Source: Fimbriosthenelais zetlandica
Lineage: Eukaryota
Assembly: GCA_977030845.1 (NCBI GenBank)
Contig: OZ365111.1
Span: 19,592,001 to 19,656,000 of the forward strand
Length of the DNA stretch: 64,000 nt
Direction of reading: 5' to 3'
Position 1 is the first letter of the stretch. Every line of letters starts with the position of its first letter. Under the pieces are notes generated by a model. The model did no database searches, was not told where the DNA came from, and saw nothing but the letters and a program-made list of their open reading frames with translations. Below, one piece after another: positions 25,360 to 64,000 of this stretch. A program made the position numbers and the translations under genes.

Positions 25360-28300
25360 CTAATTCTTACTGGGTTTATTGGACCTTGACGTCAAATTAC
25401 CACCCCTCAATGTCTTCTTCTTGGAGCTGTTTAGGCCTGCACTGTTTTCCATGGGAGGTTCGGGGGTAATAGGTGGAATAACAGATGCCCCAGGAAGAGT
25501 GGGCCGTGGTGAGGCGCTGAATTGAGAAGGAGTGGGAGGGGCGGGGTTCGCATCCGCCACAATGGCCAAGGCATCCTTCGTATTAGGTTTTTTCTTTGGT
25601 AGAATTTCTGCAAGAAATATTTAGTGGTTTTGGTTCAGTTATATTCAGTTATATATTTATAGTTATATATTTATAGTTATATTCTCATGCATATTTCCTA
25701 TATGATATGATCGGCATGAACTCATTAATGAATAATGGAGGAAACGTATTCTGGCAAAGAATGATCAAATTCAGAAAATTATTTAAACGATAAACAAAAA
25801 CATTGAAAACGAAGTGTCGGTGGGCAAGGGGCGGGGCTAAACAAATCAAGTGCATATATATCTTGCATTTGAAATATCATCAAATATCATTAAACATAAA
25901 GCTATTATAGTTATATTAATTTTAGCGTTGATTATATGATTGTCTTACGTTCAGGCCTGCAATTGCCCACGTTGTCTAGAAAGCTGGTCAGGATACCAAG
26001 CTCTCCCTGGAGTTTGTTTGTAATGTTAGAAATGATAGCCTCCCGGTCGCCTGTCTTCTCCAGCAGCTCTCCTAAACTTTCCACCAGCACGATGTCCTTA
26101 TCTGCGAACTGCTGTTGCATGGCACGGTCCTCGTCCCAGTCGACGGCTAGCACTCCTGTCATAGTAATAGTACATTGAGTGAGTGAATATTAAACTATGT
26201 TTAACTTGAACAGCATAAGAATAGGTCCCTACTCTTTTAAGCTATCCCAGGACGAGGAGGAAACACGTTGTCGGACACACAGGGAAGCTTGGGGAATTGA
26301 ACTGGTGACTACACACGCATTCCAGTCAAAAATTTTACTGTGTTACAAAAATAATTTATTTTAAATATATTAAATATTTTCCCAATCAAATCTCATGGTA
26401 AATTCTCACCTCTAATTTCGGAATCCTCTTCTTGTAGTTTTCCCATCAGTCGTAGATTTGTATCCATCTCTTCATGCATATTTTCAATGTCCTTTTCCAT
26501 CTTGGTATTGGCCTGGCGAAAACAAGCCAATCATTCCATCAATATACAATCTTTGTAAGCCATTCTCTCAGGCCGGATAAAATTAACATAAAAATTCTTA
26601 CCCTAGTGAAACGATCGTTTTCCTCCAGGACGCGTTTCAGTTTGCAGCCAACTACATAGACCTTCTCCTCGATGTCTCGCACTTCTACTGCTTGGGTTCT
26701 CATCTGCTGCAGCAACTGGCCACGTAGCTGTTTACTTTCGGCTTCTATTCTCTCCTAAAGGAACCAAGGAAAGTTAAAAACACTATAAAACAGACCAAGG
26801 CAGGTGCGTCTACAAAAAGTCACCGGTTTCAAGAGCGCGACCATAGAAACTCCCTTATTTGTTCAAGCCATTAAGGGCAAAATATTTAAGATTTGTTAGC
26901 AAAATCAAAATTGAAAATACTGTAATTTGTGTAAAATACATACTGAAAAGATCGTACAAATCTTGAATACTGAAATACTATTGAAGTCATACCTTGGGGT
27001 TGGCTAGCTTACTGAGCTGGAACTTGATACGTTTCACCTGATCTTCAAGGCTCAGTTTCTGGTTTTTCTTCGCTGAAAGCACGTATTGAACATTCAAAGT
27101 TAGTCATGTCCAACTAAATTTCAGCAATACAAAGTATCTTGTAGCTTTTAAAATAGCCAAATAACTCACCCACTATCCCCTTTTTGACAACTTCATACTG
27201 CTTGTTCATATCCTCGAACTCTTTCTCAAGATTTTCAAAGGTGGGAAGTTTTTCTTCCACTTGAGTTTTCTTCTCTCCCAGTTCCTCATCCATGGAAGAA
27301 ATGTCTTCCTGCATACAAGAAATTTATTCACATGGTCTATCGGACATTTCTTATGTTACTAACAAATGTTAATACAATACTGTATATTCAATAAGGTTAT
27401 TTCTTGAATAAAATAAAATTTGTTGAGGGAGACGAAAATGTGTGCAGTGCACCAAACATGTTCACAATTCTAGGAGATTTTGTACCTGAATTGATTTAAT
27501 TTCTAATTCATATCTCTCCTTCAACTCGCTGTATTGAGAGGACTGATGTTCCAATTCTTCTGTAAAAGTCTTAATACCCTCGTCGGTTTCTTTAATCTTT
27601 TTCTGAAGGTCGGTGCCCTGCAACATTAGAAAAATAATATATAAACCATCATTTTTTCTACAAACAAAAAACTGAGGGAGATTTTCCATTGGATAATATA
27701 AGAATACCCCCTTTAAGTAAATCCCAAGAATTCTTTTTATTCGTATGGAGGAAAAATATATCACTTTAATTTTTAAAAGAGTCACGTTCCAGGTACCGGT
27801 ATTAAATATAGATCGAGTATGGACAAAGATCAAGGGCGGCAACAATGGGCTGATTAAACAGAAAGTGTGACGATAACTCGCATCCGTCGCGTCAAAACAG
27901 CAAGTCCAACATCCAAGTATCCGCCAGTAAATCATCATTGTTCCTTTTCGACCTTCGAAACATTACTAGAGTGAAGAACTTTCCTTCTAATCCTTGACTT
28001 AATTTGGACATTTTCATACTGACCTCTCTCGATAGTTGTTCATGTTGAGTCTTGCCATCACGGATACGTTTGTTCATGTCGACCATTAATTTACCGGACT
28101 CAGTTTTGACATCGTCCACTTGCGTTGTCACCGCCTCCCTCTTGGTTTGCATATCCATTCTTGAAAAGAAAGAAAAAAATATGATCATTTATCATCCAAT
28201 ATATCAACTACATAAGCACCAACGACAAAAAGATAGTATGCTTCAACTCAAGTGCAACAAACTTTCAGATTCTGAGAATAAAACACTTGTGAGATAACAA

Positions 28301-34332: not shown

Positions 34333-37300
34333 TCATGTTTGTCCCTCAGAAGGTTGTGATTGTTGCTGTTGCAGCTGATGTGTATGTAGAGCTGAGAGGA
34401 TGGACATCACGGAGCTCGTGGAGAGGTTGAAGGGCTGCAGTATTTCATATAGTTCAGCGAAACATGGCACTCCTAAAAACAGAAAAATTCACAATGTATA
34501 TAATCTGTATTCACAATTTACATAATCTGTACCGGTATTCAAAATTTACATAATCCGTTACGAATGAAGAACTTCATTATTAAAGATATGAGTTGAACAT
34601 TTTGGTTAAATTGTTTCCGTTCCATATCTGAAGGCCTACCAGGTAGGCCTACGCTACTAATGAAGCCAGATAGTTTACGGATTTTGTTTTTGCTTTTATT
34701 TGAATGCAATAAAGTAATATGGTAAATAATAGGCAATGTGAGCGGTATTGGTAGGCTATAGAGACCTGTATAGTTGATGTTAGCCAGCTGGGAGGGGTGA
34801 GGTAAATCGTGCCAGGTAAGGAGACATCCCAGTGTCTGTATGTCCGTGTGTTTGAGAGGTACTCCCCGTAGATAATCCACGAGAAGCTGGCGAACCCCTG
34901 AACAAAATAAATACAAACATGAATCTACATTCAACTTGTATTAAAGCAGAGATGGTGAGTTAGCCAATGCCTGATGCGTTGGAACAAATTTAGGAAATAT
35001 GCTGACAATTTAGCTTACAAGGACTTATAAGAATATTTTTTTTAAACTGAATGTGTGAAAACTCTTGCATCTAGTAAGGTCTATATAATTTGCTCGTATT
35101 ATTCTTCCAGAAATATGTGAAAGAAATTGTGGAAGAAAATAACCACCCAAAATGTTTATGAAATTTACCATTTTTATCCTCCAGAAGGTTTTGTATATGT
35201 GAGGATATGGAAGTGAGTAGCTCGGGGCTGATCAGGCGGGGAACCGGGTTCCCATTCTCTCCTCCGCCGCCACTCCCACGTCCTCCTCCCGACGGGCACC
35301 TGCCCTCCAGCCACCGGTAGAAGGCAGTCATGATGCGCACCTGCCAGAGGCAGAGAGGTGCACCAGTGGTGGGCGGGCACCTGACCAGGTGCTCCAAGGC
35401 GATGTAGGAAGCCAGGACCTCGGGCTTCTCCTGGCTGATGCACTCAAAGAGGACGCGCGACAAAACCAGCTGGTTCTCAAACTCCTGGAAAGATCGTGCG
35501 GAAAAGTTTGGAATTAGTGAGTGTTTTGGTCCTGAGTAAGTGACAGAAAGAGGGTACGGACAGATGGGAAGAGAGGGGAGGGACATGGATGGTTGGGGGA
35601 GAGTGCGACAGAGAGAAGTGGGGAGATGCGGTTGGGAGGGGGTCATAAAAAAATGTGTAAACTATTTTGTATTCCCGAGGAATATATTTTGAGAGAAATA
35701 AATCCTTGCTTTACCTTCGGGTGGTTGGAGAAGCAGAGATATTCAGCGAAGGCGAGGATGAGGGGGTCTGAGGAGAGAGTCTTGATGTCTGAGGACTGGA
35801 TGATTTTACCACTTGACTGGTCTTTGGTCAGAGACTGAGACAGAACGCTGTGATAGCCTTTAGGATCATCTTGGTAGGACAGATGACCAGCTCTCTGTTT
35901 TACATAAAGATGTCCCGGGCCTTCTAGAATATTCCTAAAATACAAACAAGTGTGAGGAAATATCAAGGACAAATATGATTAGTATTTTAAAATTAATAAA
36001 TTACAATTAAATCGTCGTATAATAAGAAATGACATCTTTCTTACTTTAGATTGGACCAGTTGGTACTCGTGAATGCTACCTGCCAGTATCGGGGACCAAG
36101 CACCTTCACCTGCAAGAAACATTTTTGCTTTAAGATGTTTGAAACAAATTTGGACAAACAAAGGAGTTTCTTAAGGAGGGTGGGGTGTACATTCTTACCT
36201 CCTTGATAAGATCAAGTTCCGGTAGAATGCAGGGTGCCATTGTCTTGTATGTTACATTTCTGTAAAAATCCGAATCCTGGAAAAAAAACATCAGATTATC
36301 AGATATGAATCTCATTTGAGTTCGTTGAAGTTTCCAATAACTTGAGTAAGAAATGTACTACTAAAATATTCGGCACTTACTTTGAATGTTATTTCAATGG
36401 GTGCATAACAATATTGATTGGAGTCCACGTCTCTTGGGATAAGAACTCTGGGTTCTGCTGCCAGGACATACAAATGTCGGAACGCTTGCAAATGATACCT
36501 GTAAATAAATTAATAATGAAATTATTACTGATTTTATTTGGACATTTTCAGCTACCACCCATCCATTAAAGCTAGGTTTGTATTAAGAGTACATTGCAAA
36601 CACATTATTATGAAAAAATCCTCTTGAATTTGAAAAGCTAAGAATATTTGAGTTAGTGTCCGTACCTGTTGTCATTGCTATGGATGGGGAATTTAGGGAA
36701 GAATGCCATGACCATGGCAGCCACGGCCTGGGGTGAGGTTGAAAGAGAGTACCGACCTCCACCCAGGAAGAGGAGACCTAAAGCCAGGCTGGTGGCCATG
36801 TGAGAGCCATAGAGGACATAGCTATAGGAAGGCCCCACTCTAGAGCGGAGATATCGGCAGAGACGTAACACCTCCAGATTCCCTGTACCAGACATTACCT
36901 ACAAACGGTAAAGTTCATGATCATAAGCTTCTATTGAAGACATACAGTAATGTTCATGAACAGCTTCTATCAAAGGCATACAGACAGTAAAATTCATGAA
37001 CAGCTTCTATCAAAGGCATACAGACAGTAAAATTCATGAACAGCTTCTATCAGAGACATACACTATCTCATGCTCATTAATAGATTCTATAACAGGAAAT
37101 GTATACTCACCATAGCTAGAGAGAGTACAATGACAACCAGACAATTTTCTACAGTACTTCTCCCTGCTTGTTCCACCAGAGAGGCTTTACTCAACATTAG
37201 TGCTTTGTTGGCACGCTCAAGCTGAAAATATATCGCATATACTTGATCTACAACCCTTGGAAGTAAATGCAGGGACTTATTGTGAAATACAAGTTTTTCT

Positions 37301-40300
37301 ATTAATGTGTGTATTTATAATGTCAACGAGTTTCGCTAGGGAAGAGAAAACACCCTTACCAGACAACGGAAGGCTGCCTGGTTGGCCGAACCAGCGAAAC
37401 GCAAAGCCAGGGCCATACACGAACCAGCTACGATGTTACAGTAGGCCTGACTAGAAATTTAAAATACACAAATATTTAGAACAAACATCATTTATTTATT
37501 TGAAAGCCTCAAAGCTAAAAAGAGGTAAAAAAAGATTATACTGGGCATATTGGTGTTTCATTTTAATGAAACTTAATGAACAAAATTCCCAAAATAATAA
37601 TAAGTTACCTCATAGTTTCAAAATCTATATCACACGTTGGGTCAGCTTTGTAGTGTGCTTTGCGGAATGCGTACTTCTCCACGATCTACGAAGCAAGAAA
37701 ATATACATAAAAAGTTTAATTCCTGGTATTCTATCAATAATTTTAAAAAACACTATCATGTGGAGTTTAATGGTGGTTAATATATTTCTGTGTGGCAATA
37801 AATGGCTATAGAATTTCAAACCTCAGGAATGTTACTGTTGATCCATTCGGAGGTCGGCTGTATATGATCCCACATCACAAGTCCTCGAGAAATCATCTGG
37901 AAAATTAAATGGTTTAACGTGCATCTAATATGAGCCGGATTCAAATGGGCGAGGAGGAAACACGCTGTTGGCATCAGAGATACAGACTATTCTTCTGGAT
38001 AAGTAGTAATAAAGGGACTTTCACATTTCAGAATTGGAGCCATGGCTGACATTTTATAACACAAAAGCTGTTTAGGGAACTGAGAAAAATGAAAAACGAA
38101 TATGAACTGTGCTAGTACATACTCTCAGCATGAGGAAGTCTGGGCGGACGAACTCCAACAAAAACTGTGTATCTGGAGCCGTGAGCCATTCAGCAACAGC
38201 ACTGGAAGAAAAAATTTATATTTATATGGCAACATTTAGAACATTAACATTTGTCCTTATCTTTATTCATATAACCATTATGAACATTTTAGATTTTGTG
38301 AAGATCTCAGATTTTATTATGAAGATTTTAGATGTTAAACCATAGCAGTTTGTCCCATAAAATTGAAAAGCCCACTTTTAGTTTAAGCTCAAGATACAAG
38401 AATAAGGACACACCTATTGTTCGTTTTGAAGAACATCATGCCGAGAGCTAAAGTTGCTCCTGGTGACGTCACATCCACATTGACGTAATCACCCTCTTTG
38501 ATCTGGTAACTAGGAGACTTGTACCTCTCTTTGTTAGCTCCTGTCTGAAAAACCAAAGACCAAATTAATAAATATAAAAAAATAAGTTCACTCTTTAATG
38601 TCTTTAAGATGTATGGTACTAACAAAGCTCTTCTTAGGTCAGGGCTCTACATTGATTTTCCAATTACAGAAATGTTAATTCTTTTTGGTTTATGATTTAA
38701 GATGAATTGCAATAAAAAGCAATAAACCTTCAATAAATGGGTGAACAAATACTAACCAATGGCCGTTTATGGGCGCCCACCATGTAATGATAAAGTTGGT
38801 CAGCCATGTTGAGATCGGAGAGTCCGATAGCCTCGCTCCCTCTCTGCAAAAATGGACAGTTATATGACACTACATCAAGGACCAGATCAGGGGCATTATC
38901 TTTATGAATGTCTAAGAAAAAATACCACCATATAAAATTACCAAAATAACATTAAATAAATTTCTCAATTAAACTTACCCCAAGCATAACATTACCAAGG
39001 GCCATGCCTGCCGCTAGGGAGTAGGATTCACGGTCAGAACTATTCTCCATCTCTGGTCCAGGGGGACGACCTGTAAGGTAAAAGAAAAATATACAAAAAT
39101 AGTAATAAACTTATAGATGCAAGCCACATATAGTTTTTCATTTATAATAAAAAAAAAAAAAATTTAAAATCCCTCAAAAAATAGATCTATATGCACATAG
39201 ACAGAGAACCCATTGGAAAATCTTTTTGTAATTCCTTACCAATCTCATTTAAGAGGACTTCAGCGATATGCCTATGGGCTGTTCCTTGATAGACAAGTCC
39301 CACCCCTAGGACAGCAGCCACTTGTACATTGTGAGGAATGTCCAGTTCTGTGGAGGTCGGAGGGAGTAAGGCAGCAACATGGATGCTCAACAGTCGCGTG
39401 GTAGCCACATCCATTGTCCCTCGCCTGAAGTGAAGAAATATTTTTATTGAACAGTATTCCATGTTAAATGAGTAATAAAATTGAAACAGGATATGTTGTA
39501 AAATTTAAGGGTTTGCATAGTCAAACACATAAATGAGTCTTTATAAATAGTCCTATCTTCAAACACAATTGAAATGACAGACAATAAAAGAAGCATTCCA
39601 AAATAGATAAAAAAATTTAAATTAAAATGAATACATTTTGAGATACATACTTTCCAGCAGAAACACCGAGGAGGAGACCCACACTGGTCATATCGTGTCC
39701 CTTCAGCAGGTAGTCGTGGACATTGAGGGTAGCGAACCGTGAGAGATGACCGCCCAGACCCAGCCCCATGAGGAAGCCGGCATGTTCGTTAGACAACTCG
39801 TTATTCTTAGGCTTGTTATAGGTGATCCACGTGGAGTCCAGCTAGAAACGATTTATTTCATTTATTTCAGAGTATCTGGGATATATATCTTGTATTTTTT
39901 TGGGAGAAATTAGTTTTCGGAATAATAATATAGTCAGGGTTTTTATAGGTTGAAACAATTGGAAAAGCTAACTGCCAATTCAGAATTGGCTCGCTGATCC
40001 TGGCTGACCCGTGGGCAGTGGCGGAAGGGTTGGGGTTCTAGTCTAAAGCATTAGACATGCATCACTGCTTTTGTCGGGGCTGTGTGTGCGGGGGGGGGAG
40101 GTTCAATCTATGTTAGGGGCTTAGCTTTTGACATAATATGTGCAGGTTTGGTCACGCCTCACTGCTCTATGACTAACCAGTGGACAGTTGGGATATGGGG
40201 CAATTATGGTTAGGGCTTATATGGGATTAGGGTTATTGAGGGTTGAGGTTATTAGGGCTAGGACTATGAGATTAGGGTTATTGAGTTTGGGGTGGGGGAT

Positions 40301-43300: not shown

Positions 43301-46300
43301 GATTTTCTGAATAGAGGTGGGTGTTTTAAATTTTCGTCAATTATTTTTTTTTTAATTTCATGCATATGGATAGTATAAATGATCTGTGGGCTCGCAGGCA
43401 GCAAGTGGTATGCAGTAACCTGCAGTACCAGTTCCCGCCACCAGGTGCTAACGCAAGTACATAGAAGCTCCACCCGGTGGCGCACAAGTGACTGAGCACT
43501 GAAATCATTTATACTTGTAGACAGTGTGTGCAACCATATACATACTACAAAAGGCTATCAGGATCTAATGCAATGGGTAAATGATATAGGTTACATACAG
43601 CTATGATGCTGGAGGTGGTCTTGGAGATGTTCTTCACGTAAGGATAAGGAGGGAGGGCTTTGTCCTGCAGTAAGGACGTCAACCAGTGATATATACTGGG
43701 CGGCTCCCGAGTCATGAACGGAGGCAGGCTCAGCTGGTCTACCACTTCTAGAAATCAGAAAAATTATTGTTTAATTTACATAAACTTGTTTTCTTTTTTC
43801 CATGACTGATACAATTTGGTCAATGGCGGAATGAATAGTCAATTTAGTCTTATTTTTTCAAAAGTCGATCCTAGCAAATAGACAAATTATTCAAACTAAA
43901 ATCACTTGATTACAATAATGTTTTGAGGTAAAAGATACATTACTTTCACACCAAACTTTGAAATAACTTCAATTACCCACCTTGGGGAATGCTGGAATTT
44001 TTATCATGGACTAGGTTGAAAAGGTGTGGGAAATCTCGGCAGTAATGGTCTACATAGAGTTCACAACGCATGTCACTGAAAACAAGACAATAAATACAAG
44101 GTTGCAAAATACTAGACCGCGAGAGAAATGAGAGAAAATAAAAAATAATATCAACAGAAAATTCAAAGAATAGTAAATTCAAAAGTTACCTTGTAAGAAG
44201 TGTCAGAAGGCTCGCTAGATTAGGTAACTCATGTGTGTACAATGTTTCTAACTTGGTGTCCTGCAAAAAATCAGTTGCAAATATTAACTTGGAACTATCG
44301 GAAGAATTGGTGCATATGTGGGATAATCATGAGTAGTGGACATACAAAATTTATATTTGAAAAATGTATCAGTATATTTAAGATTGATTTTTCTGTAGGC
44401 TTCCTTACTGGAAAGTTAGAACCTGCGATTTCAGAACTACTAAGAATTAAAAAAACAATTTTTGTGCTTATTCTAGAACCTAATATGGAAGTAATATGTT
44501 TTAGAGAAACAGATATTTCCTTTACCTCATAGACTAGATGTAGAGCGAAGACGAGAGCTGGGAGGTGAGAGAAGAGAGGAGCAGACAGGTCTATAGCCGT
44601 GTTTGTAGGGCCCTCTGTCGGAGTCCTTCTAGCGACAGGCGTGGGAGTTAAACCAGAGGAGGAGCCAGAGGTACTCAACATGAGCTGATGGTGGTCCGAG
44701 GACAAAAGGTACTCCCAGTCCTACAACAATATTATAGTTAAACAGTAATCAGAGTATCACTCAAGTAGTTCATTACATTAATAATTCGATACCAGAAATT
44801 TAAAATAATCTGGCAAAAACCAGATGAATTAAATAACGATAAATATAGATTTATAAAAGTGAATGTATAGAAAGATTTGTTACCTCATCTGAACCTTGAT
44901 CGGATGGTTTTGCCTTCTTAGGCATCACAACTGGAGACAGGGACTTGTCCATGCTCTGATGGCGGAGGAGAAATACATCATTTTTATTACGAATGGATTT
45001 AATTCAATATAAAATTATCTGAATATCTCTGTTATAATCACTAACACTGAAAATCAAAGGAAGGAAAATTTATTTTAAATTTCTTATATATTTTAAAGAT
45101 AAATTATTTTTCTTGGGAATTATATTTAGGAATCTTATAGGAATTTCGCACCTGGTAGATGAGATGGAGACTGTTGTTATCATAGCCTACCAATCCTAAC
45201 AGACAGCAGGTAAACTGTACCCACTCTGACTGACCGTTAATACTGCCCGGAGCGTTCCTAGTACAGTACCAGCGGACCAATGTTGTCATAGCTACATCCT
45301 TAGGTAACATCTGCTTGATGGCTTCCAAGCTGCGGAGCACTGAAACCATTGAAAACAGGGGTAAAACATACTGCATTCAGGGGCGGATAAAGGTTATCAT
45401 AAAGCCCAAGGAGTGGGTTGTGAGTGTGGGGTTAGGTCTTTGATTCTATTTATAATTTCTTTTAATGAAATAAAGATTTTTTTTACCGAGTGGGGAAGAT
45501 GCAAGCTTGGGTAGGGACGTGCGGTAGAGTTGGCCATCCATCAATTCCTGAAATAAATTTTTAAATTTCTTTTTTAAATTCCAAAGACATATAAATTCCA
45601 TATTATCAATATGACCATAGACTTCGAACAAAAAATCACTTGGGTTAAACTTCCTTCTTTTTAATTTCATAATATTTACCAAAGTGACTCGACTGTTCAC
45701 TGCATCCCGGAGGCCGGCTATGGAACCAGTGGCTATGCTGTTCTGGAAACTAACATCTTCTGTCATAGAACCTTCGAGAATAGAGGAGGAATCCAACTCG
45801 GTGGGCACAGGCGACAAAAATCGAACCTGGAAAATAAAATGCAATGGCATGAATATATTCCGAAAACCCCGAATAGGGACTGATCACGTTTAGGACGTAC
45901 TCCTTTATCAGACGGGTTTCTGGTCAAACCTTAACTGTTTTTTAATAGATAAGTTCAAGATCAATAAGGATTAGGACCGACATAGAGAAACTTACAGAAA
46001 CAAAAGGCCAGGTGTGATTTAGATAAAATTTGGGTTAAGGACGGCAGTCCTAATTTTTAAAAATATATTCCATGCGTTAATAACCTCAATTATTTTAGCG
46101 TTCATGTCGGCGTAAATTAAAATGCTTGAAATATTTTAGTTCCACCCACCTCCTCGTCAAATCTAGCGTCCATGGCTGAAGGAGGTCGGCTGGAGGTGAA
46201 GGGTCCAGTCTGGTTTAGTGGACTGCCGAATGGCGTACTGGGCTGAGGCTGGGTCTTCAACACAGGCGGCTGTAACACCAGGCTAGTGGAGATGTTGAGA

Positions 46301-53900: not shown

Positions 53901-55291
53901 AATGAATGTGAACGGGCAAATGTCATATATTTATCAGGATTTTACATAGAAAGGCGTCAAAATTATTTTCTTTTTTTTGTTTTTTGAAGGATAAAATCAA
54001 TTTCGGCCAATGTAAATTAAAGCCACATAAAATGTCATAAGAAAAAAATAGTTCCGGTCCGTATGGAACGGGAGTTCCATACGGAAAACCGTATGGCACC
54101 CCCCTATATGGCACTTTCAGATGGAATGCGCATATAATAAAATTACGTATGCTCTAGTAATATCAAATCATCTACTTTGCTTCTCCATAGTCCCTTTAAA
54201 AATATGGCACGTCCCCGAGAAATAAAGGAGCCTTTGCCAATGATTTATTAATAAGAATTTCCTTTTTGTATGATTGTCTTATTTAGGTTTATAGTTCACA
54301 GTGATGAGAATAATCCTTATCTACGATCGATGGAATCCTTCATGGAGGAGGTGCTGATCTTTTCTCCCAATTTACTTGTAGTCAGCGGACTACAAATGAT
54401 GGATAACTTCCCTTTTGCCCCCGGTAAAAATTTCGATTTTAGTCATTCAGAAATTCTACAGTTGTCTGCTCGAATTAACAACAAAGGATTATAATTACAT
54501 CTTGACGTTTTAAATATTTGGAACAATAGTGATTAATTTGTGTGGCATTACACTTCAACCAGTGCGTAAATTTATGCACTGTTCTTTCTAATGAATACTG
54601 GCAACATATATGATTTTTTTTTTCAGGCGAGAGGCTGGATCGTTTACTGAAGCTCGAACGGTTCCTTCAAACCGTCCCCCAAGACACCCTCATGCATTTT
54701 GAACTGGCCTCCTTTGCTGAAGAATCCTGCTTCCGTGATGTGGTCGATAACGTTGTCTACCACGCAGATTCCTTAGGCATGAACGAGCAGGAGCTTCCCA
54801 ACCTTCACAGTATTCTCACCAACGGTTCAGTCAAACTCATATCAGATCCTTACCCTAGGATAGCTACCAGCTTAGACCACATGAGGGCGGTGTACAAAAT
54901 CCTCCACCAGAGACCCTTAGGTAAAGGTGAGCGCCAAGTGAGCAGGATCCATGTCCATACCCTGGCCTACCAAGCCATCATGACAGCCAAAGGTTCCGCC
55001 TGGAAAAATACCATGTCTGCTACAGCCAAGGCCTCGCTCACTGCCAACCGGCATGTATGTGGCTCCAACTTTATTCACACCGACAAAGCCCGTCTACTCA
55101 TGGATGAGTCGTTTAGCACGAGTCGTGAGGATGGGAATAGAATGCCCTTCCAGGCTGATCGACCAGTGTCCTGCTGGAGTGAGGACGATGTTGAGATCTG
55201 TGTGGCTCCGAATTTAGTTTGTACTGAAGTGGTGCAGACAGGAGGAGGCGGAGATAATATCTCATCCGCTGGACTTGTACTTCAAATTTAG
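50988..55291 (+). CDS. ADPGK: ADP-dependent glucokinase; exons 50988-51307, 51554-51744, 52732-52828, 54287-54423, 54627-55291
   Basis: N-terminal hydrophobic anchor; motifs VAVGFGACED, LGGNAPVMA, DDIHLLLEY, APRANRFIVHSD, LVVSGLQMM, HFELASF, DSLGMNEQEL, RIHVHTLAYQ and ribokinase-family GGGDNIS. Exon phases are consistent (exon-2 donor is the non-consensus GTGCAC). Confidence 0.96.
51882..52655. mobile_element. About 775-bp MITE with 24-bp terminal inverted repeats in ADPGK intron 2
   Basis: Left GGGGAGGCCGGGAGAGTTGGGCCA; right-end reverse complement GGGGAGGTCGGGAGAGTTGGGCCA (1 mismatch); internal subterminal copies of GAGTTGGGCC/CCCAACTCTCC. Confidence 0.85.
52885..53045. mobile_element. About 160-bp fold-back (hairpin) element in ADPGK intron 3
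   Basis: About 70-bp arms AGAAATGGAAC..GACAGCAATATGGCGGGAATAATGGCAC..ATCGTTTGTGCGGATGAATATGGGAC inverted around loop GAACCGAAGGTGA. Confidence 0.85.
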
Positions 55292-55309
55292 GTGTTTTTT
55301 TTTCATTTT

Positions 55310-55426
55310 CAGGGCCGGTGCGGGTGGGGGAGGGGAAATCCCCTAAGAAAAAAAGGCAGGGCGTAGAGAAAAAAGGGAAGGATGATCACACCCCGCTCTT
55401 GAAAAAATCCTATATGTCCGGCCCTG
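55310..55426. mobile_element. Small MITE-like element just after the ADPGK stop
   Basis: Termini CAGGGCCGG ... CCGGCCCTG (9-bp perfect inverted repeat); TSD not evident. Confidence 0.45.
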
Positions 55427-57082
55427 CTTTTGACAAGTTCAAGTTTTTCAAATTTACTTCATCCACAAAAAATGTGATAGTTACTGTACTTACATGTGAT
55501 TTTTTTTCCTGTTGAACATTCCCTTGATTCATTTATGTGATTTTCTTTTGATTTGTTGCATACTGTTACAATGATTGCAATCTTGTCAAAAATTTAGAAC
55601 AGTCGTATGTGAAACTAGTGGTAAACTTGTGAAATATTGAATCTATTATACATGTATATACATTACCTGCCATTCATTTTTGTCTCAGTCCCAATAACCC
55701 ACTAGTGCACGGGTCCAAGGTTAGATATTTACTTTAGTATATTTTGTATTACTTTACTCATATAAAAAATATCGCAATGTCAATGTATACACTGTGAGAA
55801 TGATGTGTATTGATATAATTCAAACTATTTCTTGCTAGTTTAAACTAGCCAAATGACAGTATGGCAATGCGGAATACATATATCTCTATTTTTATTGGGT
55901 ATGCTGGTGAAATAAGAATAAAAATGGTGGTAGGTGCTTTGGTTATATATACAGTCAAAATGGTGTATTAACAGTAGGCCTACCGGTATTATTATTCATG
56001 AATATGGAGTAGAAAATCGTAAGATTTACTTGATCATTATAGTGACATACTATATTGAATGAAATGAGTTTATTTCGCATTCCATGTTTATTGAGAATCT
56101 GGTGACAACAAAAAGAATTTAGTTCAAAAGCAATATGGGTTCAGCTATGTATCTATATAAAAAAATAGGCAATATTAGCTGGTCTAAATTGCATTTATTC
56201 CCTTTTAACTTGAGTACTGGTAATAACGGATAACCTTTAATTTTTGGATAACCTTTAAATAACCTTTAAATATGACTATTTATAGCCTGTCTAGTTTAAT
56301 ATGGCTTCATGCGTAACCTAGCAGGACGCTGTTAATATCTTTATTGTACTTAATATTAAAATTAAATATAATTTTTTGTATATTTTCTGCTTATTAATTT
56401 TATATTTAATAGTGTTATTAAAAAGCCAGTGAATGCTCGTGTCAACTAGTGAAATGTCGACGGAAACATGGTCAATGTTTTCGATAATCCATTTCATTGT
56501 CAACCTATGTATTCCATTATTATCCAGTGAGTGTGAATAAAAAAGATAATACCTGAACGGGTATTAGAGGGTAAAGCTATAAATAAGACAGGGTGCTCAA
56601 TTTGGAAGGTGATCCCATAGGAGACCATAATAATGCCATATATTTTTCATGTTATTGTTACTTGTGATAGTCCTGTCGCTACTTACACAAATTTTTATAT
56701 CTTTATCCGTTATTTATCATAGGTCTACTGATTGAATACGGTAATCAGTTAATTAGCTAAATTTACAATTAATTCAGAGGTGTTAAATTCCAAGAAATAT
56801 TTACTACTTTGATAAATTGATTTGTGATTAATCATATAATTTATACGGAAAAACTGTCTGAGTAGAACCTGGCCTGTGATTTTTCAGTTTTAATTTTCAT
56901 AATTATATTTTTGTAATTTCCCAACTGGAAGTGCCTATAAATCTGTCTAATTGTTGACAATAAAAATGTTATAAATAAATAAATCGGAAAGTGCTTCTGA
57001 ATATGTGGAGCGCACAACATAATATTCTATCTGCATGCACTGCATGCAAAGATACAGGAGGCGGGAAAATCTTTGTTAGAAA

Positions 57083-57140
57083 GTCACATGATTATCACGT
57101 GATAGTCAAGGACGTCATACACTTTTGGAGTGACGTCACT
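57083..57140. promoter_or_regulatory. HAP2 proximal promoter with palindromic E-box and CRE motifs
   Basis: TATCACGTGATA at 57093-57104 and AGTGACGTCACT at 57129-57140, both perfect 12-bp palindromes, 65-115 nt upstream of the ATG. Confidence 0.5.
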
Positions 57141-57205
57141 TCCCGTATCGGTGCAGAGAGGATGGCGAATCCTTCATTGTCCTTGGGAAAACTAGAAAAA
57201 GAAGA

Positions 57206-60200
57206 ATGAAGACGGACTATATTCGTGGCAATCTTTTTCTCCTATTAACAACAATTGCTGGATTATTTCTTTCGCAGTGTGGCCGTGTATTTTGCGATTG
57301 GGAGTTGAAAGGGACTGCACATGTGACATCATGCCTGGCCCTGGGACCAGAGGCAGAGGCAGGGAAGAAAGAGAGGTCAAAAAGCCAGAGTTATCTAGAG
57401 AACTGCAGGCGAGAAGTAAAAATTCATGTTGACATGAAAAATATTGGAAAAGTATGTGTTATATACTAACTTCTCTGAAATTTATCATGCCTCATTAAAG
57501 AAATATTGGGAAATTCGTTTGGTCTGAAAAGACAAAACTTTGTCAAAAGTCTCACTCTGGCAGTCTGGGCAAGTGCCAGCAGAGAGTGTAGCCGTAGGAA
57601 GATTATCCTACACTCGTTGGTGCCAGTGCCAGTGCCAGTGGCCAGTGCCCTGGCCTTGGTGGCTTTGTTGTAAGGTCTTGTTAGGCCTACTTGTAAATCT
57701 AACGATAAATTTTTGTATACCGAATTATATAACATACGGTACATGAATAATAATAATTATTTATAATTTACAATTATATTTATCAGGTACAGAATGAGTC
57801 TGGGTTTATTCTAATCAAAGACGTCTTTGATGAAGCCGTGAAGAGCCAGGTCAGGTTGCTCAACCCACTAGTGCTCAGAGTGAAACAGAATCATTTGCTA
57901 TGGAATTATCCATTCAAACATATTGTGGTAAGATTACTCCATTGAATGATTTATTCCTATTTTCCTATTTTCTAGTTTCATAATACTAGTCCTACAGTTA
58001 CATTGGACTACATGGAGAATGAGTTTAAAAGTTAAAAGCCAGCATTAATTAGAAATGCATGATGGCATGGTCTTTTTGGTTAGCATTTTCTTCATACACA
58101 TGTACAGAATTTTTCTTGTAAATAACCCTATGTCTATGCAGCACAGTGAATTCATTTTTGCATTCATATCTAACTCAGTCTGTCAACAACAAACCATATG
58201 AAGCAGTATACCACCATGAGACATCTGATACAATGGTAGCACAATGTGACTCAAAGGGTATCACTGACACAGCCTGCGTGGAGGACCGACGTCCTGGGTC
58301 AGCCCAGCCAGTAAGTTTAAAATTCATAATAATTTTGAATTTAGTTGATTTATACTTCAAATCTTTAAAAAATGGTGAATATTAATTAAGCTCAGTTGAA
58401 GATATGTAGTGTATAGGCGTACGTACGTATGCTTTAACAAATCTAAAGAAGGTGAATGAACAATTAGAGGTTTATTATTAAAAATTCAGAATAAATACAG
58501 TGTAACACTGTGAATTTCCCTTACTACCATAGACACTACTACTGAGTTATCATAAAAGCTAAATAGCTAAAACCAAACCAGATTATAAAATCTATCATAC
58601 CGGTATTTGTATAAATTACAGTGTTTAATACCTTTCCCATTGCATGCTCTATAGGGATTCTGCTGCTCTTGTGATAGGCATACTTCAGGGGAAAATGAAC
58701 GTCTGCGAGGTGGACAGACCTGCGGTGGGAAAGAACCCCATCTGAGCATACATTGTCTACGATTCGACCCTCTTTGGTATGCTTCATACAATCTACTGAT
58801 ATCTTTCTTCGAAAAAATCAATATTTTTGTGAATTATTTTTCTTTTCTATTTACAGGTATTCAGTGAATAATATGAGTGAGGGGATCCTAGATCATAGCC
58901 TTAGTCTTGGAGTGTATTTAAGATCGGACATACCTGGTGGCAATCCCAAGTGGATGTCTTTAGCCGATTCTGAGGAGATAATACTGCAAACCCTGAAGAA
59001 CACTTTTGAAGCGAAGAACAAAAAGGCAAGTGCTTCATTGATTGATTTTCGACTTAAGCTCCATAATCAATGGATGATATTTGATTTTTGATTTTATGTC
59101 TATATTATTGTTTTTCATTTTATGAGACAGATTCACGCAGTATATCAACAGGTGTCATTTCCTAAAAGAGGTCCTCTCAATGCAGCAAGTGATTATCTTC
59201 TCATCCCTGAGCCAATTGCAATAGCAAGGCCTGAAGGTGTACATAAGCAAATTCAAGTGAGTTCAGAGTAAATAATTTGGAAATCAATACAAAATTAGTT
59301 GTTCAATGATATTATCTTAGAAAAGGGAGGTGTACTAATTTTTTTAAATGTTTATACAGTACTAGAAAACTTTCAGAAAATTTTCTTATTTTATCTTTAG
59401 GCTGGACCAGAGGAATACTTACTAATAAAGAAAGGAATGCTGACTGAAAGTGGATCCGTTTGCGGGAAAATAGGTGTTAAACATGCAGCCTTTATAAATC
59501 AGAAGAACAGGTGCAACCTCCTCCCCCAAAGGTATAAATGTAGGAAAGAATTATAACCAGATTTTTATGATATTTATCGATATTATCTCACTACATCAAT
59601 TTATAACTAGTCATAATGTTACCAGTAATCATTAATAATCCCATTTCCCCTGCCAGACTAAGCTTTAAAACTCCACTAAGCCATTATAATATCATCATGA
59701 CATACCCAGGAGAGTTTTACTAGACATCCTCACACCTCAATGATAAACCTCGTTAAATCAGGCAGCGTTTATCTTTAGAGATCAAGTATTCAGTTGCATT
59801 ACCATTCTGATGATTCATATAGAATAGAATTATAGGAATATACTGAATCTATAACCTCCTGTCCAGCTCGCCAATTACAATCAGCCAAAAACCTGTGTAC
59901 ATAACAAAACCCTCTGTGAGAGAAAGATGTGTATTGAGAGGCAGACTGAAAATCATAGATGAGTACCAAAGTTACAAAAAAAATACATAAAATATTTACA
60001 CAAAAACTTAATATATAAATCATTCGTTTCTTAATGCCTGTTACTCTATGTTAAAATAAACTTTGAAATTTAAATATTTCAAAAATTAACTTTTTGACAT
60101 AATTCCTCAGGCAAGGACTAAGTGCTTTCCAAATGTAGAAAAAATAAAATCTTTAGTTCTAGGCCCATAGACACCAACTCCACACCTAAATCCATCTTTT

Positions 60201-61748
60201 AGTAATTCCTATTCCACTATGTGTAAAGTGAACATTTTCAAACTTCTTTCTACACTCTTGTCTCTATGCAAGGAGTCTCTAGTAGGCCTACTTAATTACT
60301 GTCACAACACGGCCCTTCTAATCCTTCAGTCCTGCACCCACCCAGCCAACCTGTTACCATGGCAACTGGAGTTAGTCACCCTAGACCTGACCATAACCCC
60401 TGGACCACACCACTAAGCACTCACCAGTTAGAGTCTCCCCCCTAGACTTGACCACAAACCCCTTGGCTATATTTATTCATTATTCTTTTGGATAATCACT
60501 TATTGTGTCAAAGTAATCAATTTCAGGCTAATGTTTTTAAATATGAGAGAACAAAACTAAACTCTGGATAGGTCTTACAAATTGTAGATTCAGATATTCT
60601 CTATCTTATACTTAACTTAATTCTCTCAGTGCCAGGAGAGGCATATAAGTTTCACTGTTACATGTGGACTCAAATGCTTCAATTACCAGAGATGTTTCAT
60701 TGCTTTCATTCAAAAGAAGCTGAACATTTCATTTTGCAATCAATCTTCTCATTAAATAGAGGCCAAATGTTGTTATGATTGACCAGCAGAGTTATTCACT
60801 GAACAGTTCAAATACACAATAGGATTAATGAAAGAAAGACTTAGGCAAGTCTCTCTCCAATAATCCTGACCCCCCTCCAAGTTGCCAGTGGAGGGCGGGG
60901 GGCTGCTGCAGGTGCTACCTTGACCCCTAGCTCCAAGTGACTTTGACCTTTGTCTTAAATTGTGTGTATTGAAAAGTATAAATAGAAAAAAATACTGAAC
61001 TGCATAATGCAATACATGTATGCAAAGGTCTATTTTTGTGCTTTTTTTGTCTAGTACATACTAAGCTCTATCTTTAAAAATAAACTTGCCAGAGTGAAAA
61101 AACATGAAAATATTGACCAAAATGGAAAATATTAAAAAATTCATAACAAATCAACTTATGAGTGGAATGCATAATGCGATATAGGTATCAACAGCTCTTT
61201 TTATGTACTTGAATTCATCTAATTCATTTTAAGCTTTATCTTTAAAAATAAACTTGCTGAATTAAATAAACTGAAAATATTAGGTTAATTAGTTTTTACA
61301 TCACTGTAACGTCATCTTACGTCGTTTCAACCAACTACAAAATATATTTCTCATATATGCCTCACCCACTGACTGCTCATGAACCACGTGTTATCACTCT
61401 TGAATATTTTTAATCTGGCCGAAATAGCATTTAAGTGATTTCATACCCCTGACCTAATTCCATGTAACTAATTAGGTCAAAGGTCAAATATGTAGGTCAA
61501 CTTATAGTCCATCATGTATCTTTACACTACATACCATTCATCTTATTCTAGATCCGCATGGGTCCAAAAAAATTACAATCAAATTTTACCAATTTGGCTG
61601 CTTTGGTGACGTCATATGACGTCATGTGATGACGTATGACATCCATTCATCACATGTGACCACTCCTTACTATGGTCTACAATATGTGTGAAAACCAGAT
61701 TCCTACCTCTAATATAAACCCGTTTTTCATCAAAAGTCTAACTACAAC

Positions 61749-61793
<45 letters not shown>

Positions 61794-63899
61794 AAAAAAA
61801 AAAATAATAGTGTAGAACAACGAGCACAAAATCTAAAACCCCATTTTCCCCATAAAGGGGAAATGGGATTAATTATTTTTCCTATATTTAATTAAGAAAT
61901 TTCTTTCTCTTCAGCTGTCTTGACAATCAACCTAATGACTTTTGGTCGCACGATAAGGTAAGAAGGCTCCTGCAATAATATTCATTCCAGGAACTCATGA
62001 TGCATGAAATAATCGAACCTAAAATGTTCATTCAAAAGAGATACATGTATTGTTAAAAAATCTCCCATTTATTCATTCTAGGAGAAGACTGACAAGAGTA
62101 AACGCAAGTACTTTCTGTCATCTCGTGGCAATCTGGCTGCAGACGCTGTCTCATTGCCGCGCGGGGGACAACCTGAGAAATCTGTACAATTTGCGTTTGA
62201 AGACACATTGGTGAGTAAGATACAGCTCGAAATCAACGCTGAAAGACTGACACTGCTTCACCCTGGGTAAGTTCTGACCATTGGACATCAGATTATCCTA
62301 TAGGAATAAAGTGGTTCTTAACTATATAGACAAAGGTGTAGAAATGTCTTGCAAAAATTGATTGAATCTAAGTAGTATATGGAATCTACTGAAGACGCAG
62401 GCAAAAATATTTGTAAGTAGTATAATGAAACTGGAAATCTTTACAGGGAATGATGAGTATAGAGGCATGTGCTGCTTTCAAACTTCCTACTAAATGATAA
62501 AATTTCTTGTAAACTATTAAAATTGTATTAAAATCACATTCTTGCAGATCACATGGGGTTTTGATTGAGGCATCCAGTTGGAGTCGTACTGGGAGCGTGC
62601 TGATCATGGTTCACTTTCAGAACAGAGGTCTGGTCGCTGAGAACTTTACAGTTCAGCTCACTTCATGTACACATGATACAGCCAAGTTCACATCCAAAAT
62701 TCTCAAGGTTGCACCCCATCAGTCTAATCGGGTTGCTTTTGTGCTTGAACCACTAAGGAAAAGTGCAAGCAAGGCTGCATGTCTCGGTATGAAAAACCAA
62801 ACTGAATTCATTTGGTCCAACCGGACTGGTTATGAAAATCCATTTTTTTCGTCCAGACATGGGAAAATGAGAATGGTATTTTTAAACTTTTACTATGCAG
62901 ACAAACTGTATAGGTCTTTGTAATATTTTCCAGTTGGACTACTGAACCACAACGAGAAATTGATTGCTTATAGAGAAATTACGATGAATATTTTTGATCG
63001 ATGCTTCTGCATAGAGATGTGCCAGTGCTCCGTGAGTATATATATCGGGAAAATTAAATGTTTAATACTTCAAAAATCATGTAGAAACTCAAAATAATAA
63101 AAATCGACAGTGTAATTGATAGAAAATGGAAAGTTATGCACTTAATAAATAAAATTTGTATAATTCTCAGTGCGTCAGAGATGGAAGATACGACTGTAAA
63201 ATGATGTCACGGGATATGTATCAAAAAGCTGGATTTAGAAATGTCTTGCCAAGTAAGATACAAGCGCCCCGGGTACAACCAGCTGCAGCTCTCACTTTAG
63301 AAATAATATTCATCTTCCTACTCGGCTTCCTCTTAATAGGTATGTCAGATAGAATTTATCTCCAAAATATAAACCAAATAAAATTTCTCGGATTTTGGAA
63401 AAGCCTAATGGGAGTAATCATAAACATTTTCACCCAAAATAAAATATCATAAGGCTTCCAATGTTTATGATAATCATATTCCACTCTTTAGGAATAATAA
63501 AGATGATTTTGGGGATCTACTGCTCAGTGCGCATTGGCCAGTTTGGACTCGCATTATGCTACAGTCATAACGTCAGGTAAATTGTGGATGGGGACATATT
63601 TTCCAATATTTTGAAAAAGAAATATTAATCACGGATAAAAGAATGCGTTTGGTTCCGCCTTGTATGATTTGGTTTTGTTGGCTAGAGGCAGTTTAAAATA
63701 TATTATATTTCTTTATAGAAGGCAAGATGAACATGCAATGCCCTTATGGAAAGAAGCACTCGTGAATGTGTTCTTTGTCTTCTACGTATTCATCTATCCC
63801 CTTCATCTCTTGGCCACCAAGAAAAACTTTTTCTTATTACGTGATAGGATAAAGGTAGATCATGAAAGATCAAAAAGATTCCTGACAATTTTGAATTGA
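57206..63899 (+). CDS. HAP2: HAP2/GCS1 (Hapless 2) fusexin, about 688 aa, 14 exons: 57206-57451, 57787-57927, 58179-58310, 58655-58776, 58857-59025, 59131-59256, 59401-59531, 61915-61957, 62082-62266, 62548-62786, 62934-63031, 63171-63339, 63492-63576, 63719-63899
   Basis: All junction phases match and lengths sum to 2067 nt (689 codons including stop). Signal peptide; hallmark motifs NNKPYE, GFCCSC, RLRG, HCLRFDPLWY, CGKIGV.HAAF.NQ.NRC, SCLDNQP, KIQLEINAE, Ig-like domain III with N.GLVAENF, Cys-rich stem CFCIEMCQCSC and C-terminal hydrophobic segments. The last exon could instead splice beyond the window. Confidence 0.92.
61330..61815. mobile_element. Repeat-derived insertion ending in a poly(A)-rich tract in HAP2 intron 7
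   Basis: AGGTCAAAGGTCAA and GACGTCAT-rich motifs typical of non-autonomous Helitron/Helentron-like elements of marine invertebrates, then about 50 nt of near-pure A at 61752-61803. Family assignment is uncertain. Confidence 0.35.
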
Positions 63900-64000
63900 A
63901 TTTAATGTTGTCTCCTTAATGTTAAGCAATAATACATATGTTTAAATGTCTAGGCGTTTGGAACAAAAACATGTGAGGCCATGGGATCTGGACTTGGCAA

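What the first reader, a model, noticed from the sequence alone, without database searches (positions are those of the whole stretch)
57206..63899. Complete intact HAP2/GCS1 gamete-fusogen (fusexin) gene in an invertebrate animal genome
Seen: 14 exons with matching phases give an uninterrupted ORF of about 688 aa with a signal peptide and the diagnostic GFCCSC, HCLRFDPLWY, CGKIGV and SCLDNQP motifs. It is invisible in the ORF track as a unit because the exons are small. Established: HAP2/GCS1 is the class II fusion protein that fuses gametes in plants, algae and protists; it is patchy in animals and absent from vertebrates, and I know of no functional demonstration in a bilaterian. Inference: this lineage may retain an ancestral HAP2-based sperm-egg (or other cell-cell) fusion system.
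Basis: partly seen in the sequence, partly recalled or inferred. Interest (0 to 1): 0.9.

Follow-up and report, generated by a model that had tools for sequence, protein, structure and literature searches.

The report
Intact HAP2 gamete-fusogen gene in a worm
This stretch holds a complete, unbroken 14-exon gene for HAP2/GCS1, the ancient virus-like protein that fuses gametes in plants and protists. It sits in a spiralian (probably annelid) genome, and because HAP2 is already catalogued in an annelid and other invertebrates it is a new family member, not a new discovery.

Summary
Fourteen exons at 57206-63899 (+) splice with matching phases into one stop-free 688-codon frame. All four quoted motifs are present.

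It is a genuine HAP2/GCS1:
- Exons 4, 7 and 10 each hit Pfam PF10699, in the same order as the profile.
- The only credible PDB hits are HAP2 structures.
- The spliced protein matches a profile built from 14 HAP2 proteins as one continuous domain (211.5 bits, E 1e-66, residues 63-533).
- It keeps 16 of 17 conserved cysteines and the residues that are functionally critical in Chlamydomonas (E137, R191, C196, Q361).

Neighbouring genes (WDR20, ANAPC1, ADPGK) are ordinary animal genes whose best named hits are spiralians, with an annelid first.

HAP2 is not new for this group. Structural papers from 2018-2019 already use the Capitella teleta (annelid), Saccoglossus and insect HAP2 sequences, and they note the short fusion loops of annelid HAP2.

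Not testable here: expression and splicing (no sequencing runs were listed), dN/dS (no orthologue could be fetched) and the fold (the spliced protein could not be submitted).

Exons 13-14 have no homology support, and exon 14 adds an unusual second hydrophobic segment.

Verdict: a new member of a known kind, of modest interest.

The parts
57131..57138 (+). Palindromic CRE-like octamer TGACGTCA, 68 bp upstream of the start codon. A CACGTG E-box lies at 57097-57102. Possible core promoter elements.
   Evidence: 5 copies in the window against 0.42 expected. Position read. A role in transcription is inferred only.
57206..57451 (+). Exon 1 (aa 1-82): start codon, signal-peptide-like N-terminus (about aa 1-24) and the first two conserved cysteines (C43, C67).
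   Evidence: The HMM alignment starts at residue 63.
57787..57927 (+). Exon 2 (aa 83-129), domain I/II beta strands.
   Evidence: Covered by the continuous HMM alignment.
58179..58310 (+). Exon 3 (aa 130-173): NNKPYE motif with E137, the equivalent of Chlamydomonas E126.
   Evidence: (HMM 102-142).
58655..58776 (+). Exon 4 (aa 174-214): GFCCSC, two short polar fusion loops (DRHTSGENERL and GGKEPHLSI, at 58673-58750), R191 and C196 (equivalents of R185 and C190), and HCLRFDPLW.
   Evidence: PF10699 positions 115-156, 24.7 bits; PDB 7s0k; 45.7 bits.
58857..59025 (+). Exon 5 (aa 214-270). It ends at the GC donor of intron 5 (AAG|GCAAGT).
   Evidence: The 4/5 junction (LW|YS) and the 5/6 junction (NKK|IHAV) both align without gaps to HAP2 homologues.
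59131..59256 (+). Exon 6 (aa 271-312).
   Evidence: Its codon-usage score in the model frame is poor, but the homology alignment is continuous.
59401..59531 (+). Exon 7 (aa 313-356): CGKIGV..AF..Q..RC, the start of the classical HAP2-GCS1 signature (ij loop).
   Evidence: PF10699 positions 250-288, 30.8 bits, above the 27.4 cutoff; six PDB HAP2 entries, the best two at E 0.002 and the other four at E 0.4-0.7..
61915..61957 (+). Exon 8 (aa 356-370): SCLDNQP with Q361, the equivalent of Chlamydomonas Q379. It follows the 2.4-kb intron 7.
   Evidence: (QSCL conserved across the junction).
62082..62266 (+). Exon 9 (aa 371-432), end of domain II / linker / start of domain III.
   Evidence: HMM 361-410.
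62548..62786 (+). Exon 10 (aa 432-511), core of the Ig-like domain III with C472 and C510.
   Evidence: (PF10699 positions 384-446, 27.5 bits). One search gives beta-sandwich look-alikes, a lead only.
62934..63031 (+). Exon 11 (aa 512-544), end of domain III and start of the cysteine-rich stem.
   Evidence: the alignment ends at residue 533; C541.
63171..63339 (+). Exon 12 (aa 545-601): stem (C553) and the first half of the transmembrane helix (from about aa 585, at 63291).
63492..63576 (+). Exon 13 (aa 601-629): second half of the transmembrane helix (to about aa 611, at 63523) and the start of the cytoplasmic tail. Reading through its donor gives a stop straight away, so a 629-aa form is also possible.
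   Evidence: No homology support: splice sites, open frame and G+C only.
63719..63899 (+). Exon 14 (aa 629-688): tail with net charge +5, containing a second hydrophobic segment (aa 641-662), then the TGA stop.
   Evidence: No homology support. This is the least certain part of the model.

Best explanation
This is an intact nuclear gene for a HAP2/GCS1 orthologue, a type I membrane protein of the class II ('fusexin') fusogen family, native to a spiralian, probably annelid, genome. By homology to the Chlamydomonas, Arabidopsis and cnidarian proteins, the product would sit in the sperm plasma membrane. After gamete adhesion it would insert the tip of domain II into the egg membrane, trimerise and fold back into a hairpin that merges the two membranes. 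Shown here: the gene structure, family membership, and retention of the disulfide framework and of the E-R-Q network that holds the fusion-loop tip together. Inferred, not shown: transcription, the exact 3' exons, male germ-line expression, the three-domain fold and fusogenic activity.
For: The 14-exon frame is uninterrupted.
Pfam PF10699 is hit by exon 4 (24.7 bits, just under the 27.4 cutoff), exon 7 (30.8 bits) and exon 10 (27.5 bits), at profile positions that run in order.
PDB sequence searches with exons 4 and 7 return only HAP2 structures: 7s0k, 5ow4, 5mf1, 6dbs, 6e18, 5ow3. Only 7s0k and 5ow4 reach E 0.002 with exon 7. 7s0k scores E 0.05 with exon 4, and the other four score E 0.4-0.7.
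blastp of the spliced model against a full-length intronless red-algal HAP2 (L006, 566 bits to Pfam) gives 26% identity over residues 112-516, E 3e-28, and reads straight across the exon junctions.
A profile built from 14 HAP2 proteins matches the model as one domain: 211.5 bits, E 1e-66, residues 63-533.
A six-frame search of 55300-64000 finds only the modelled exons, on the + strand and in order.
45 of 59 highly conserved columns are retained, including 16 of 17 cysteines, E137, R191, C196 and Q361. These correspond to Chlamydomonas E126, R185, C190 and Q379. R185 was shown there to be essential for fusion and to pair with the strictly conserved E126 (PMC5332557).
There is a C-terminal transmembrane helix and a net basic tail.
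Flanking genes are ordinary animal genes (WDR20, CBM14 mucin, ANAPC1, ADPGK), so this is not contamination.
HAP2 is expressed only in spermatogenic cells in Hydra (PMC2766252).
Against: There is no transcript evidence: no sequencing run was listed in either of two searches.
No orthologue from a close relative was recovered, so purifying selection is untested.
In relatives whose ADPGK exon is 74-89% identical, no HAP2 lies within the 1.4-10 kb available downstream of ADPGK.
A search of 1.84 billion representative proteins with exon 10 found no true relative.
The two fusion loops are very short and mostly polar, so how the protein inserts into the membrane is unclear.
Exons 13-14 rest on splice sites and an open frame alone. 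Exon 14 adds a second hydrophobic segment that none of the 14 HAP2 homologues has.
No HAP2 has yet been shown to act in fertilisation of any bilaterian.
Confidence: 0.8

Rival explanations
1. A true HAP2 homologue that has been co-opted for something other than sperm-egg fusion, for example somatic cell-cell fusion (as EFF-1/AFF-1 does in nematodes) or an adhesion role, while fertilisation uses other factors such as DCST1/2.
For: A fertilisation role for HAP2 in bilaterians is unproven. The fusion loops are short and polar. The tail is unusual, with a second hydrophobic segment. DCST-type factors overlap with HAP2-bearing lineages.
Against: Wherever it has been tested, HAP2 is gamete-specific. 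The residues needed for fusion in Chlamydomonas are retained. Short loops are typical of poriferan, cnidarian and annelid HAP2, and the cnidarian protein is reported to take part in fertilisation (Ebchuqin et al. 2014, seen here only as a reference).
Confidence: 0.1
2. A gene that looks intact but is no longer used: silent or at an early stage of decay, in a clade where HAP2 is being lost.
For: HAP2 has been lost many times in animals. It is absent from the syntenic position in five related assemblies. No transcript evidence could be obtained.
Against: No stop or frameshift occurs in 2067 nt spread over 14 exons. All 13 introns have good splice sites. 16 of 17 conserved cysteines and the E/R/Q triad are intact. 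Chance alone would not preserve this.
Confidence: 0.07
3. Foreign DNA: a contaminating protist or symbiont contig, or an endogenised viral class II fusogen, rather than a host gene.
For: HAP2 is far more common in protists and plants than in animals. The closest sequences retrieved were algal or unnamed.
Against: The gene lies 1.9 kb downstream of ADPGK on the same strand, in a window with WDR20 and ANAPC1 whose best named hits are spiralians. Its small AT-rich introns and exon/intron G+C contrast fit a host gene. It matches the HAP2 profile, not a viral family. Identity to every retrieved non-animal HAP2 is only 21-27%.
Confidence: 0.02

Closest known systems
Capitella teleta (annelid) HAP2, ELU07639.1, as used in Fedry et al. 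2018 and Baquero et al. 2019
   Same: It is a bilaterian, spiralian HAP2. The literature says annelid HAP2 has deletions in the fusion-loop variable region, which matches the short loops seen here.
   Different: No direct comparison was possible, because the sequence could not be fetched. It cannot be a close relative in domain III: a search of 1.84 billion representative proteins with exon 10 found nothing related at E <= 0.001.
Cyanidiales red-alga HAP2 (PDB 7s0k; metagenome locus L006; closest named relative Cyanidiococcus)
   Same: Colinear over the whole ectodomain, 26% identity, E 3e-28. Shared motifs: NNKPYE, GFCC.C, R.RGG..C, HCLRFD.LWYS, C.KIGV..AF.N...RC and QSCL.
   Different: The algal gene has no introns, has longer and more hydrophobic loops, and has a cysteine-rich tail. 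The window gene has 13 introns and shorter polar loops.
Chlamydomonas reinhardtii HAP2 (PDB 5mf1, 6dbs, 6e18)
   Same: The E126-R185 salt bridge, C190 and Q379 have counterparts here: E137, R191, C196 and Q361. The R-to-C spacing is identical.
   Different: The Chlamydomonas protein has long amphipathic-helix fusion loops, an algal cystine-ladder insert and a mucin-like region. None of these is present here.
Cnidarian HAP2 (Hydra, Nematostella)
   Same: It is an animal HAP2 with a multi-exon gene. Hydra expresses it only in spermatogenic cells. Nematostella is the one animal for which participation in fertilisation has been reported (cited).
   Different: It is non-bilaterian. An amphipathic helix is predicted in the Nematostella loop region; nothing comparable is evident in the 11- and 9-residue loops here.
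Other fusexins: nematode EFF-1/AFF-1 and viral class II glycoproteins
   Same: They belong to the same structural superfamily. A language-model search with the algal HAP2 lists them just behind HAP2 clusters.
   Different: The window protein shows no sequence-level match to those families. Only PF10699 is hit.

Membership tests
HAP2/GCS1 (Pfam PF10699) | Match to the family profile at or above the curated score | tested here: met
   The tool only accepts single exons. Exon 7 scores 30.8 bits and exon 10 scores 27.5 bits against a cutoff of 27.4. Exon 4 scores 24.7 bits. The three hits fall at profile positions 115-156, 250-288 and 384-446, in order. The whole spliced protein scores 211.5 bits, E 1e-66, against a profile built here from 14 PF10699-positive proteins.
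HAP2/GCS1 (Pfam PF10699) | Conserved ectodomain cysteine (disulfide) framework | tested here: met
   16 of the 17 cysteine columns conserved in at least 85% of 14 homologues hold a cysteine in the model. The one exception lies in the cysteine-rich stem, where the alignment is ambiguous.
HAP2/GCS1 (Pfam PF10699) | Tip-organising residues: the Arg of the cd loop, its Glu partner in strand b, and the Gln of the ij loop | tested here: met
   R191, E137 and Q361 align with the conserved columns. Their role is defined for R185, E126 and Q379 in PMC5332557.
HAP2/GCS1 (Pfam PF10699) | Type I topology: signal peptide, large ectodomain, single transmembrane helix, positively charged cytoplasmic tail | tested here: inconclusive
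   A signal-peptide-like N-terminus, a strong hydrophobic helix at about aa 585-611 and a tail of net charge +5 are present. Exon 14 adds a second hydrophobic segment (aa 641-662) not seen in 14 homologues. No dedicated signal-peptide or transmembrane predictor was available.
HAP2/GCS1 (Pfam PF10699) | Class II three-domain fold (domains I-III), trimeric hairpin after fusion | not testable with these tools
   The spliced protein has no reference that structure prediction accepts. The only support is indirect: a colinear alignment with a protein essentially identical to PDB 7s0k.
HAP2/GCS1 (Pfam PF10699) | Hydrophobic membrane-insertion loops or helix at the domain II tip | tested here: inconclusive
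   The loops are DRHTSGENERL and GGKEPHLSI: short, with L190, L203 and I205 as the only hydrophobic side chains. The literature reports similar deletions in Porifera, Cnidaria and Annelida.
HAP2/GCS1 (Pfam PF10699) | Expression in the (male) gamete and requirement for gamete fusion | not testable with these tools
   No sequencing run was listed for either query.
FF fusogens (EFF-1/AFF-1, PF14884) and viral class II glycoproteins | Match to those family profiles | tested here: not met
   None of the ten exon translations hit these families at E <= 1.

The most novel reading that the evidence does not exclude
This spiralian keeps a working HAP2 whose membrane-facing tip has been pared down to two short, nearly non-hydrophobic loops, and whose C-terminus carries a second membrane-embedded segment. 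If so, it would fuse gametes by a partner-dependent or otherwise altered insertion mechanism. Its absence next to ADPGK in related assemblies would then mark a lineage-specific retention among relatives that have moved or lost the gene.
Probability: 0.12. Interest if true: 0.6.

Novelty: new member of a known kind. Interest (0 to 1): 0.3.

Why it matters
Whether any bilaterian still uses HAP2 to fuse sperm and egg is an open question, and the vertebrate fusogen is still debated. Each intact bilaterian HAP2 is a possible entry point, especially in an externally fertilising worm where gametes are easy to obtain. This gene adds one more such candidate, with a checked exon model and intact functional residues. 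It does not change the picture: annelid, hemichordate and arthropod HAP2 genes were already known, and the same experiment could be done with them.

Tried and rejected

2. Two sequencing-run searches (RNA, then any kind) listed nothing. Splicing and expression therefore could not be checked, and read laying was never usable.

3. Synteny route to orthologues for dN/dS. Relatives were found through the last exon of ADPGK and five loci with usable downstream sequence were fetched: L001-L003 with 10 kb downstream, L009 with 6 kb, L007 with 1.4 kb. Three more were fetched with little or redundant downstream sequence: L004 (1.5 kb), L008 and L010. tblastn and blastn found no HAP2 and no alignable non-coding DNA. 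Two other places had no retrievable DNA.

4. The metagenome scan with an exon-4 alignment gave two loci, one a full-length red-algal HAP2. It was a useful reference but not an animal relative.

5. The last homologue search, with a mixed profile (A5), gave 21 HAP2 proteins, none closer than 27% identity. No annelid or other animal HAP2 was retrieved, so no tree was built.

6. MAFFT alignments of the separate exon pieces to the algal protein misplaced most pieces. Only the three well-placed pieces were kept.

7. Language-model look-alikes of exon 10 were adaptin or coatomer appendage beta-sandwiches. This fits an Ig-like domain III but is only a lead. A PDB sequence search with exon 10 gave one chance hit.

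8. Rfam found nothing in the window.

Pfam on the whole protein, structure prediction, fold search and exact look-ups were therefore left out.
Full report
**The observation**

I read 56800-64000 and rebuilt the exon chain by hand. Fourteen exons join with consistent phases into 2067 nt: 688 codons plus TGA.

From the window's base composition, 688 consecutive open codons have a chance probability of about 1.5e-21. The four quoted motifs sit at residues 174-179, 206-215, 333-338 and 356-362.

Twelve introns are GT-AG. Intron 5 uses a GC donor in the classic AAG|GCAAGT context. No GT alternative keeps the frame. The junction it creates (NKK|IHAV) aligns without a gap to HAP2 homologues.

Every exon is richer in G+C than the intron that follows it (0.437 against 0.318 overall). 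A codon-usage score trained on two other genes of the window prefers the model frame in 12 of 14 exons.

**What it is**

The exons were therefore tested separately.
- Exon 4 hits PF10699 (HAP2-GCS1) at profile positions 115-156, 24.7 bits.
- Exon 7 hits positions 250-288, 30.8 bits.
- Exon 10 hits positions 384-446, 27.5 bits.
- The curated cutoff is 27.4 bits, and the three hits are in order.

Sequence searches of the PDB with exons 4 and 7 return only HAP2 structures: 7s0k, 5ow4, 5mf1, 6dbs, 6e18 and 5ow3. The scores are modest. 7s0k and 5ow4 reach E 0.002 with exon 7. 7s0k scores E 0.05 with exon 4. The other four score E 0.4-0.7.

To get full-length references I scanned metagenome contigs with a two-sequence alignment of the exon-4 region. 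This recovered an intronless 759-aa HAP2 that scores 566 bits to Pfam. It belongs to a Cyanidiales red alga; its closest named relative is Cyanidiococcus.

The spliced model, kept in the sandbox, aligns to this protein over residues 112-516 at 26% identity, E 3e-28. Conserved residues run straight across the exon 4/5 junction (LW|YS) and the exon 7/8 junction (Q|SCL).

A profile built from 14 Pfam-positive HAP2 proteins retrieved matches the model as one uninterrupted domain: 211.5 bits, E 1e-66, model residues 63-533. The same profile, run against every stop-free segment of all six frames of 55300-64000, finds only modelled exons 3, 4, 7, 8, 9 and 10. They are on the + strand and in profile order. 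Nothing turns up in the 2.4-kb intron 7.

**Functional residues**

- 59 alignment columns are conserved in at least 85% of the 14 homologues. The model keeps 45 of them, including 16 of the 17 cysteine columns.
- E137 (in NNKPYE), R191 and C196 (in R-G-G-Q-T-C) and Q361 (in SCLDNQ) occupy the columns of Chlamydomonas E126, R185, C190 and Q379.
- In Chlamydomonas, R185 is essential for fusion (a lysine there also works). It forms a salt bridge with the strictly conserved E126 and, together with Q379, holds the ij loop under the fusion loops (PMC5332557).
- The two loops flanking R191 are only 11 and 9 residues long (DRHTSGENERL and GGKEPHLSI) and are mostly polar.
- It is also what Fedry et al. 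2018 report for poriferan, cnidarian and annelid HAP2 (PMC6089408).

**Topology and the uncertain 3' end**

The N-terminus looks like a signal peptide. A strong hydrophobic helix spans the exon 12/13 junction (about aa 585-611). The tail has a net charge of +5.

Exons 13 and 14 have no homology support, because tails are not conserved in this family. Reading through the donor of exon 13 meets a stop at once, so a 629-aa protein with an 18-residue tail is an equally viable product. Exon 14 adds a second hydrophobic segment (aa 641-662). None of the 14 homologues shows such a separate segment. I leave this unexplained.

**Host and context**

Other genes in the window:

| Gene | Position and strand |
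|---|---|
| WDR20 | 1.7-3.0 kb, + |
| 1472-aa protein with 18 CBM14 chitin-binding repeats | 20.2-24.6 kb, + |
| ANAPC1 exons | about 35-45 kb, - |
| ADPGK, last exon ending at 55291 | + |

The best named WDR20 hits are an annelid (Lamellibrachia, 70%), then nemerteans, molluscs and a brachiopod (63-67%). Unnamed assemblies reach 85% and 95% identity.

A note by another agent on this genome describes a giant cuticle collagen "of the kind known from these worms' coats", filed under an annelid reading. I take the host to be a spiralian, probably an annelid. The gene is native, not contamination.

**What could not be shown**

- Selection: I looked for orthologues next to ADPGK in five related assemblies (74-89% identity in that exon). 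No HAP2 and no alignable non-coding DNA was found in the 1.4-10 kb available downstream. In those species the gene is therefore either elsewhere or absent.
- Close relatives: searching 1.84 billion representative proteins with exon 10 found no true relative. The last homologue search returned only HAP2s at 21-27% identity. The gene appears not to be represented in the protein collections available here. This genome's proteins are probably not in them at all, since the best WDR20 hit is 95%, not 100%.
- Fold: the spliced protein could not be submitted for structure prediction.

**Comparison with what is known, and novelty**

- Steele and Dana 2009 (PMC2766252) established HAP2 in sponges and cnidarians, divergent copies in some arthropods, multiple losses, and sperm-lineage expression in Hydra.
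- Baquero et al. 2019 list HAP2 sequences from Capitella teleta (annelid), Saccoglossus kowalevskii, Tribolium, Acyrthosiphon and Orchesella among their alignment inputs (PMC6327110).
- A 2022 review and a 2026 preprint still say HAP2 acts "probably in some invertebrates" and is "present in some metazoans", without a bilaterian functional test.

**Verdict**

- Observation: confirmed.
- Identity as HAP2: confirmed.
- Gamete-fusion role: plausible but untested.
- Novelty: a new member of a known kind.
- Interest: modest. It rests mainly on the gene being a clean candidate for the still-missing functional test in a bilaterian.

Noticed in passing
window 20156-24574 (+): A single 1472-aa open reading frame made of 18 CBM14 (peritrophin-A) chitin-binding domains, separated by Pro/Thr-rich mucin-like linkers in near-identical tandem repeats (Pfam 359 bits).
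   Followed up: partly
window 57131-57138, 61607-61614, 61617-61624, 25387-25394, 38464-38471: The palindromic CRE octamer TGACGTCA occurs 5 times against 0.42 expected. One copy lies 68 bp upstream of the HAP2 start codon, and two lie 10 bp apart inside intron 7.
   Followed up: partly
window 59532-61914 (intron 7), especially 61757-61806: Intron 7 is about 2.4 kb, while the other introns are 80-344 bp. It holds a roughly 50-base A-rich run, which suggests a retroposon or other repeat insertion. It contains no HAP2-like coding segment.
   Followed up: partly
L001 10643-20642; L002 and L003 10691-20690; L009 2183-8242: In related assemblies (ADPGK last exon 75-82% identical), the region downstream of ADPGK holds no HAP2. 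In L001 the next recognisable gene is an adhesion-type GPCR (7tm_2) on the opposite strand. The ADPGK-HAP2 adjacency is therefore not conserved, or HAP2 is missing in those species.
   Followed up: partly
window 63753-63818 (aa 641-662, exon 14): A second hydrophobic segment lies downstream of the transmembrane helix. It is not seen as a separate segment in any of the 14 HAP2 homologues examined. It may be real or an artefact of the unverified last exon.
   Followed up: partly
window 35074-35646 and 44298-44705 (-): Exons of an ANAPC1 (anaphase-promoting complex subunit 1) gene on the minus strand.
   Followed up: no
L006 5299-7578 (metagenome contig Ga0078972_1002451): An intronless 759-aa HAP2 from a Cyanidiales red alga. 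In the 45-residue exon-4 region it differs by one residue from the crystallised protein 7s0k.
   Followed up: partly
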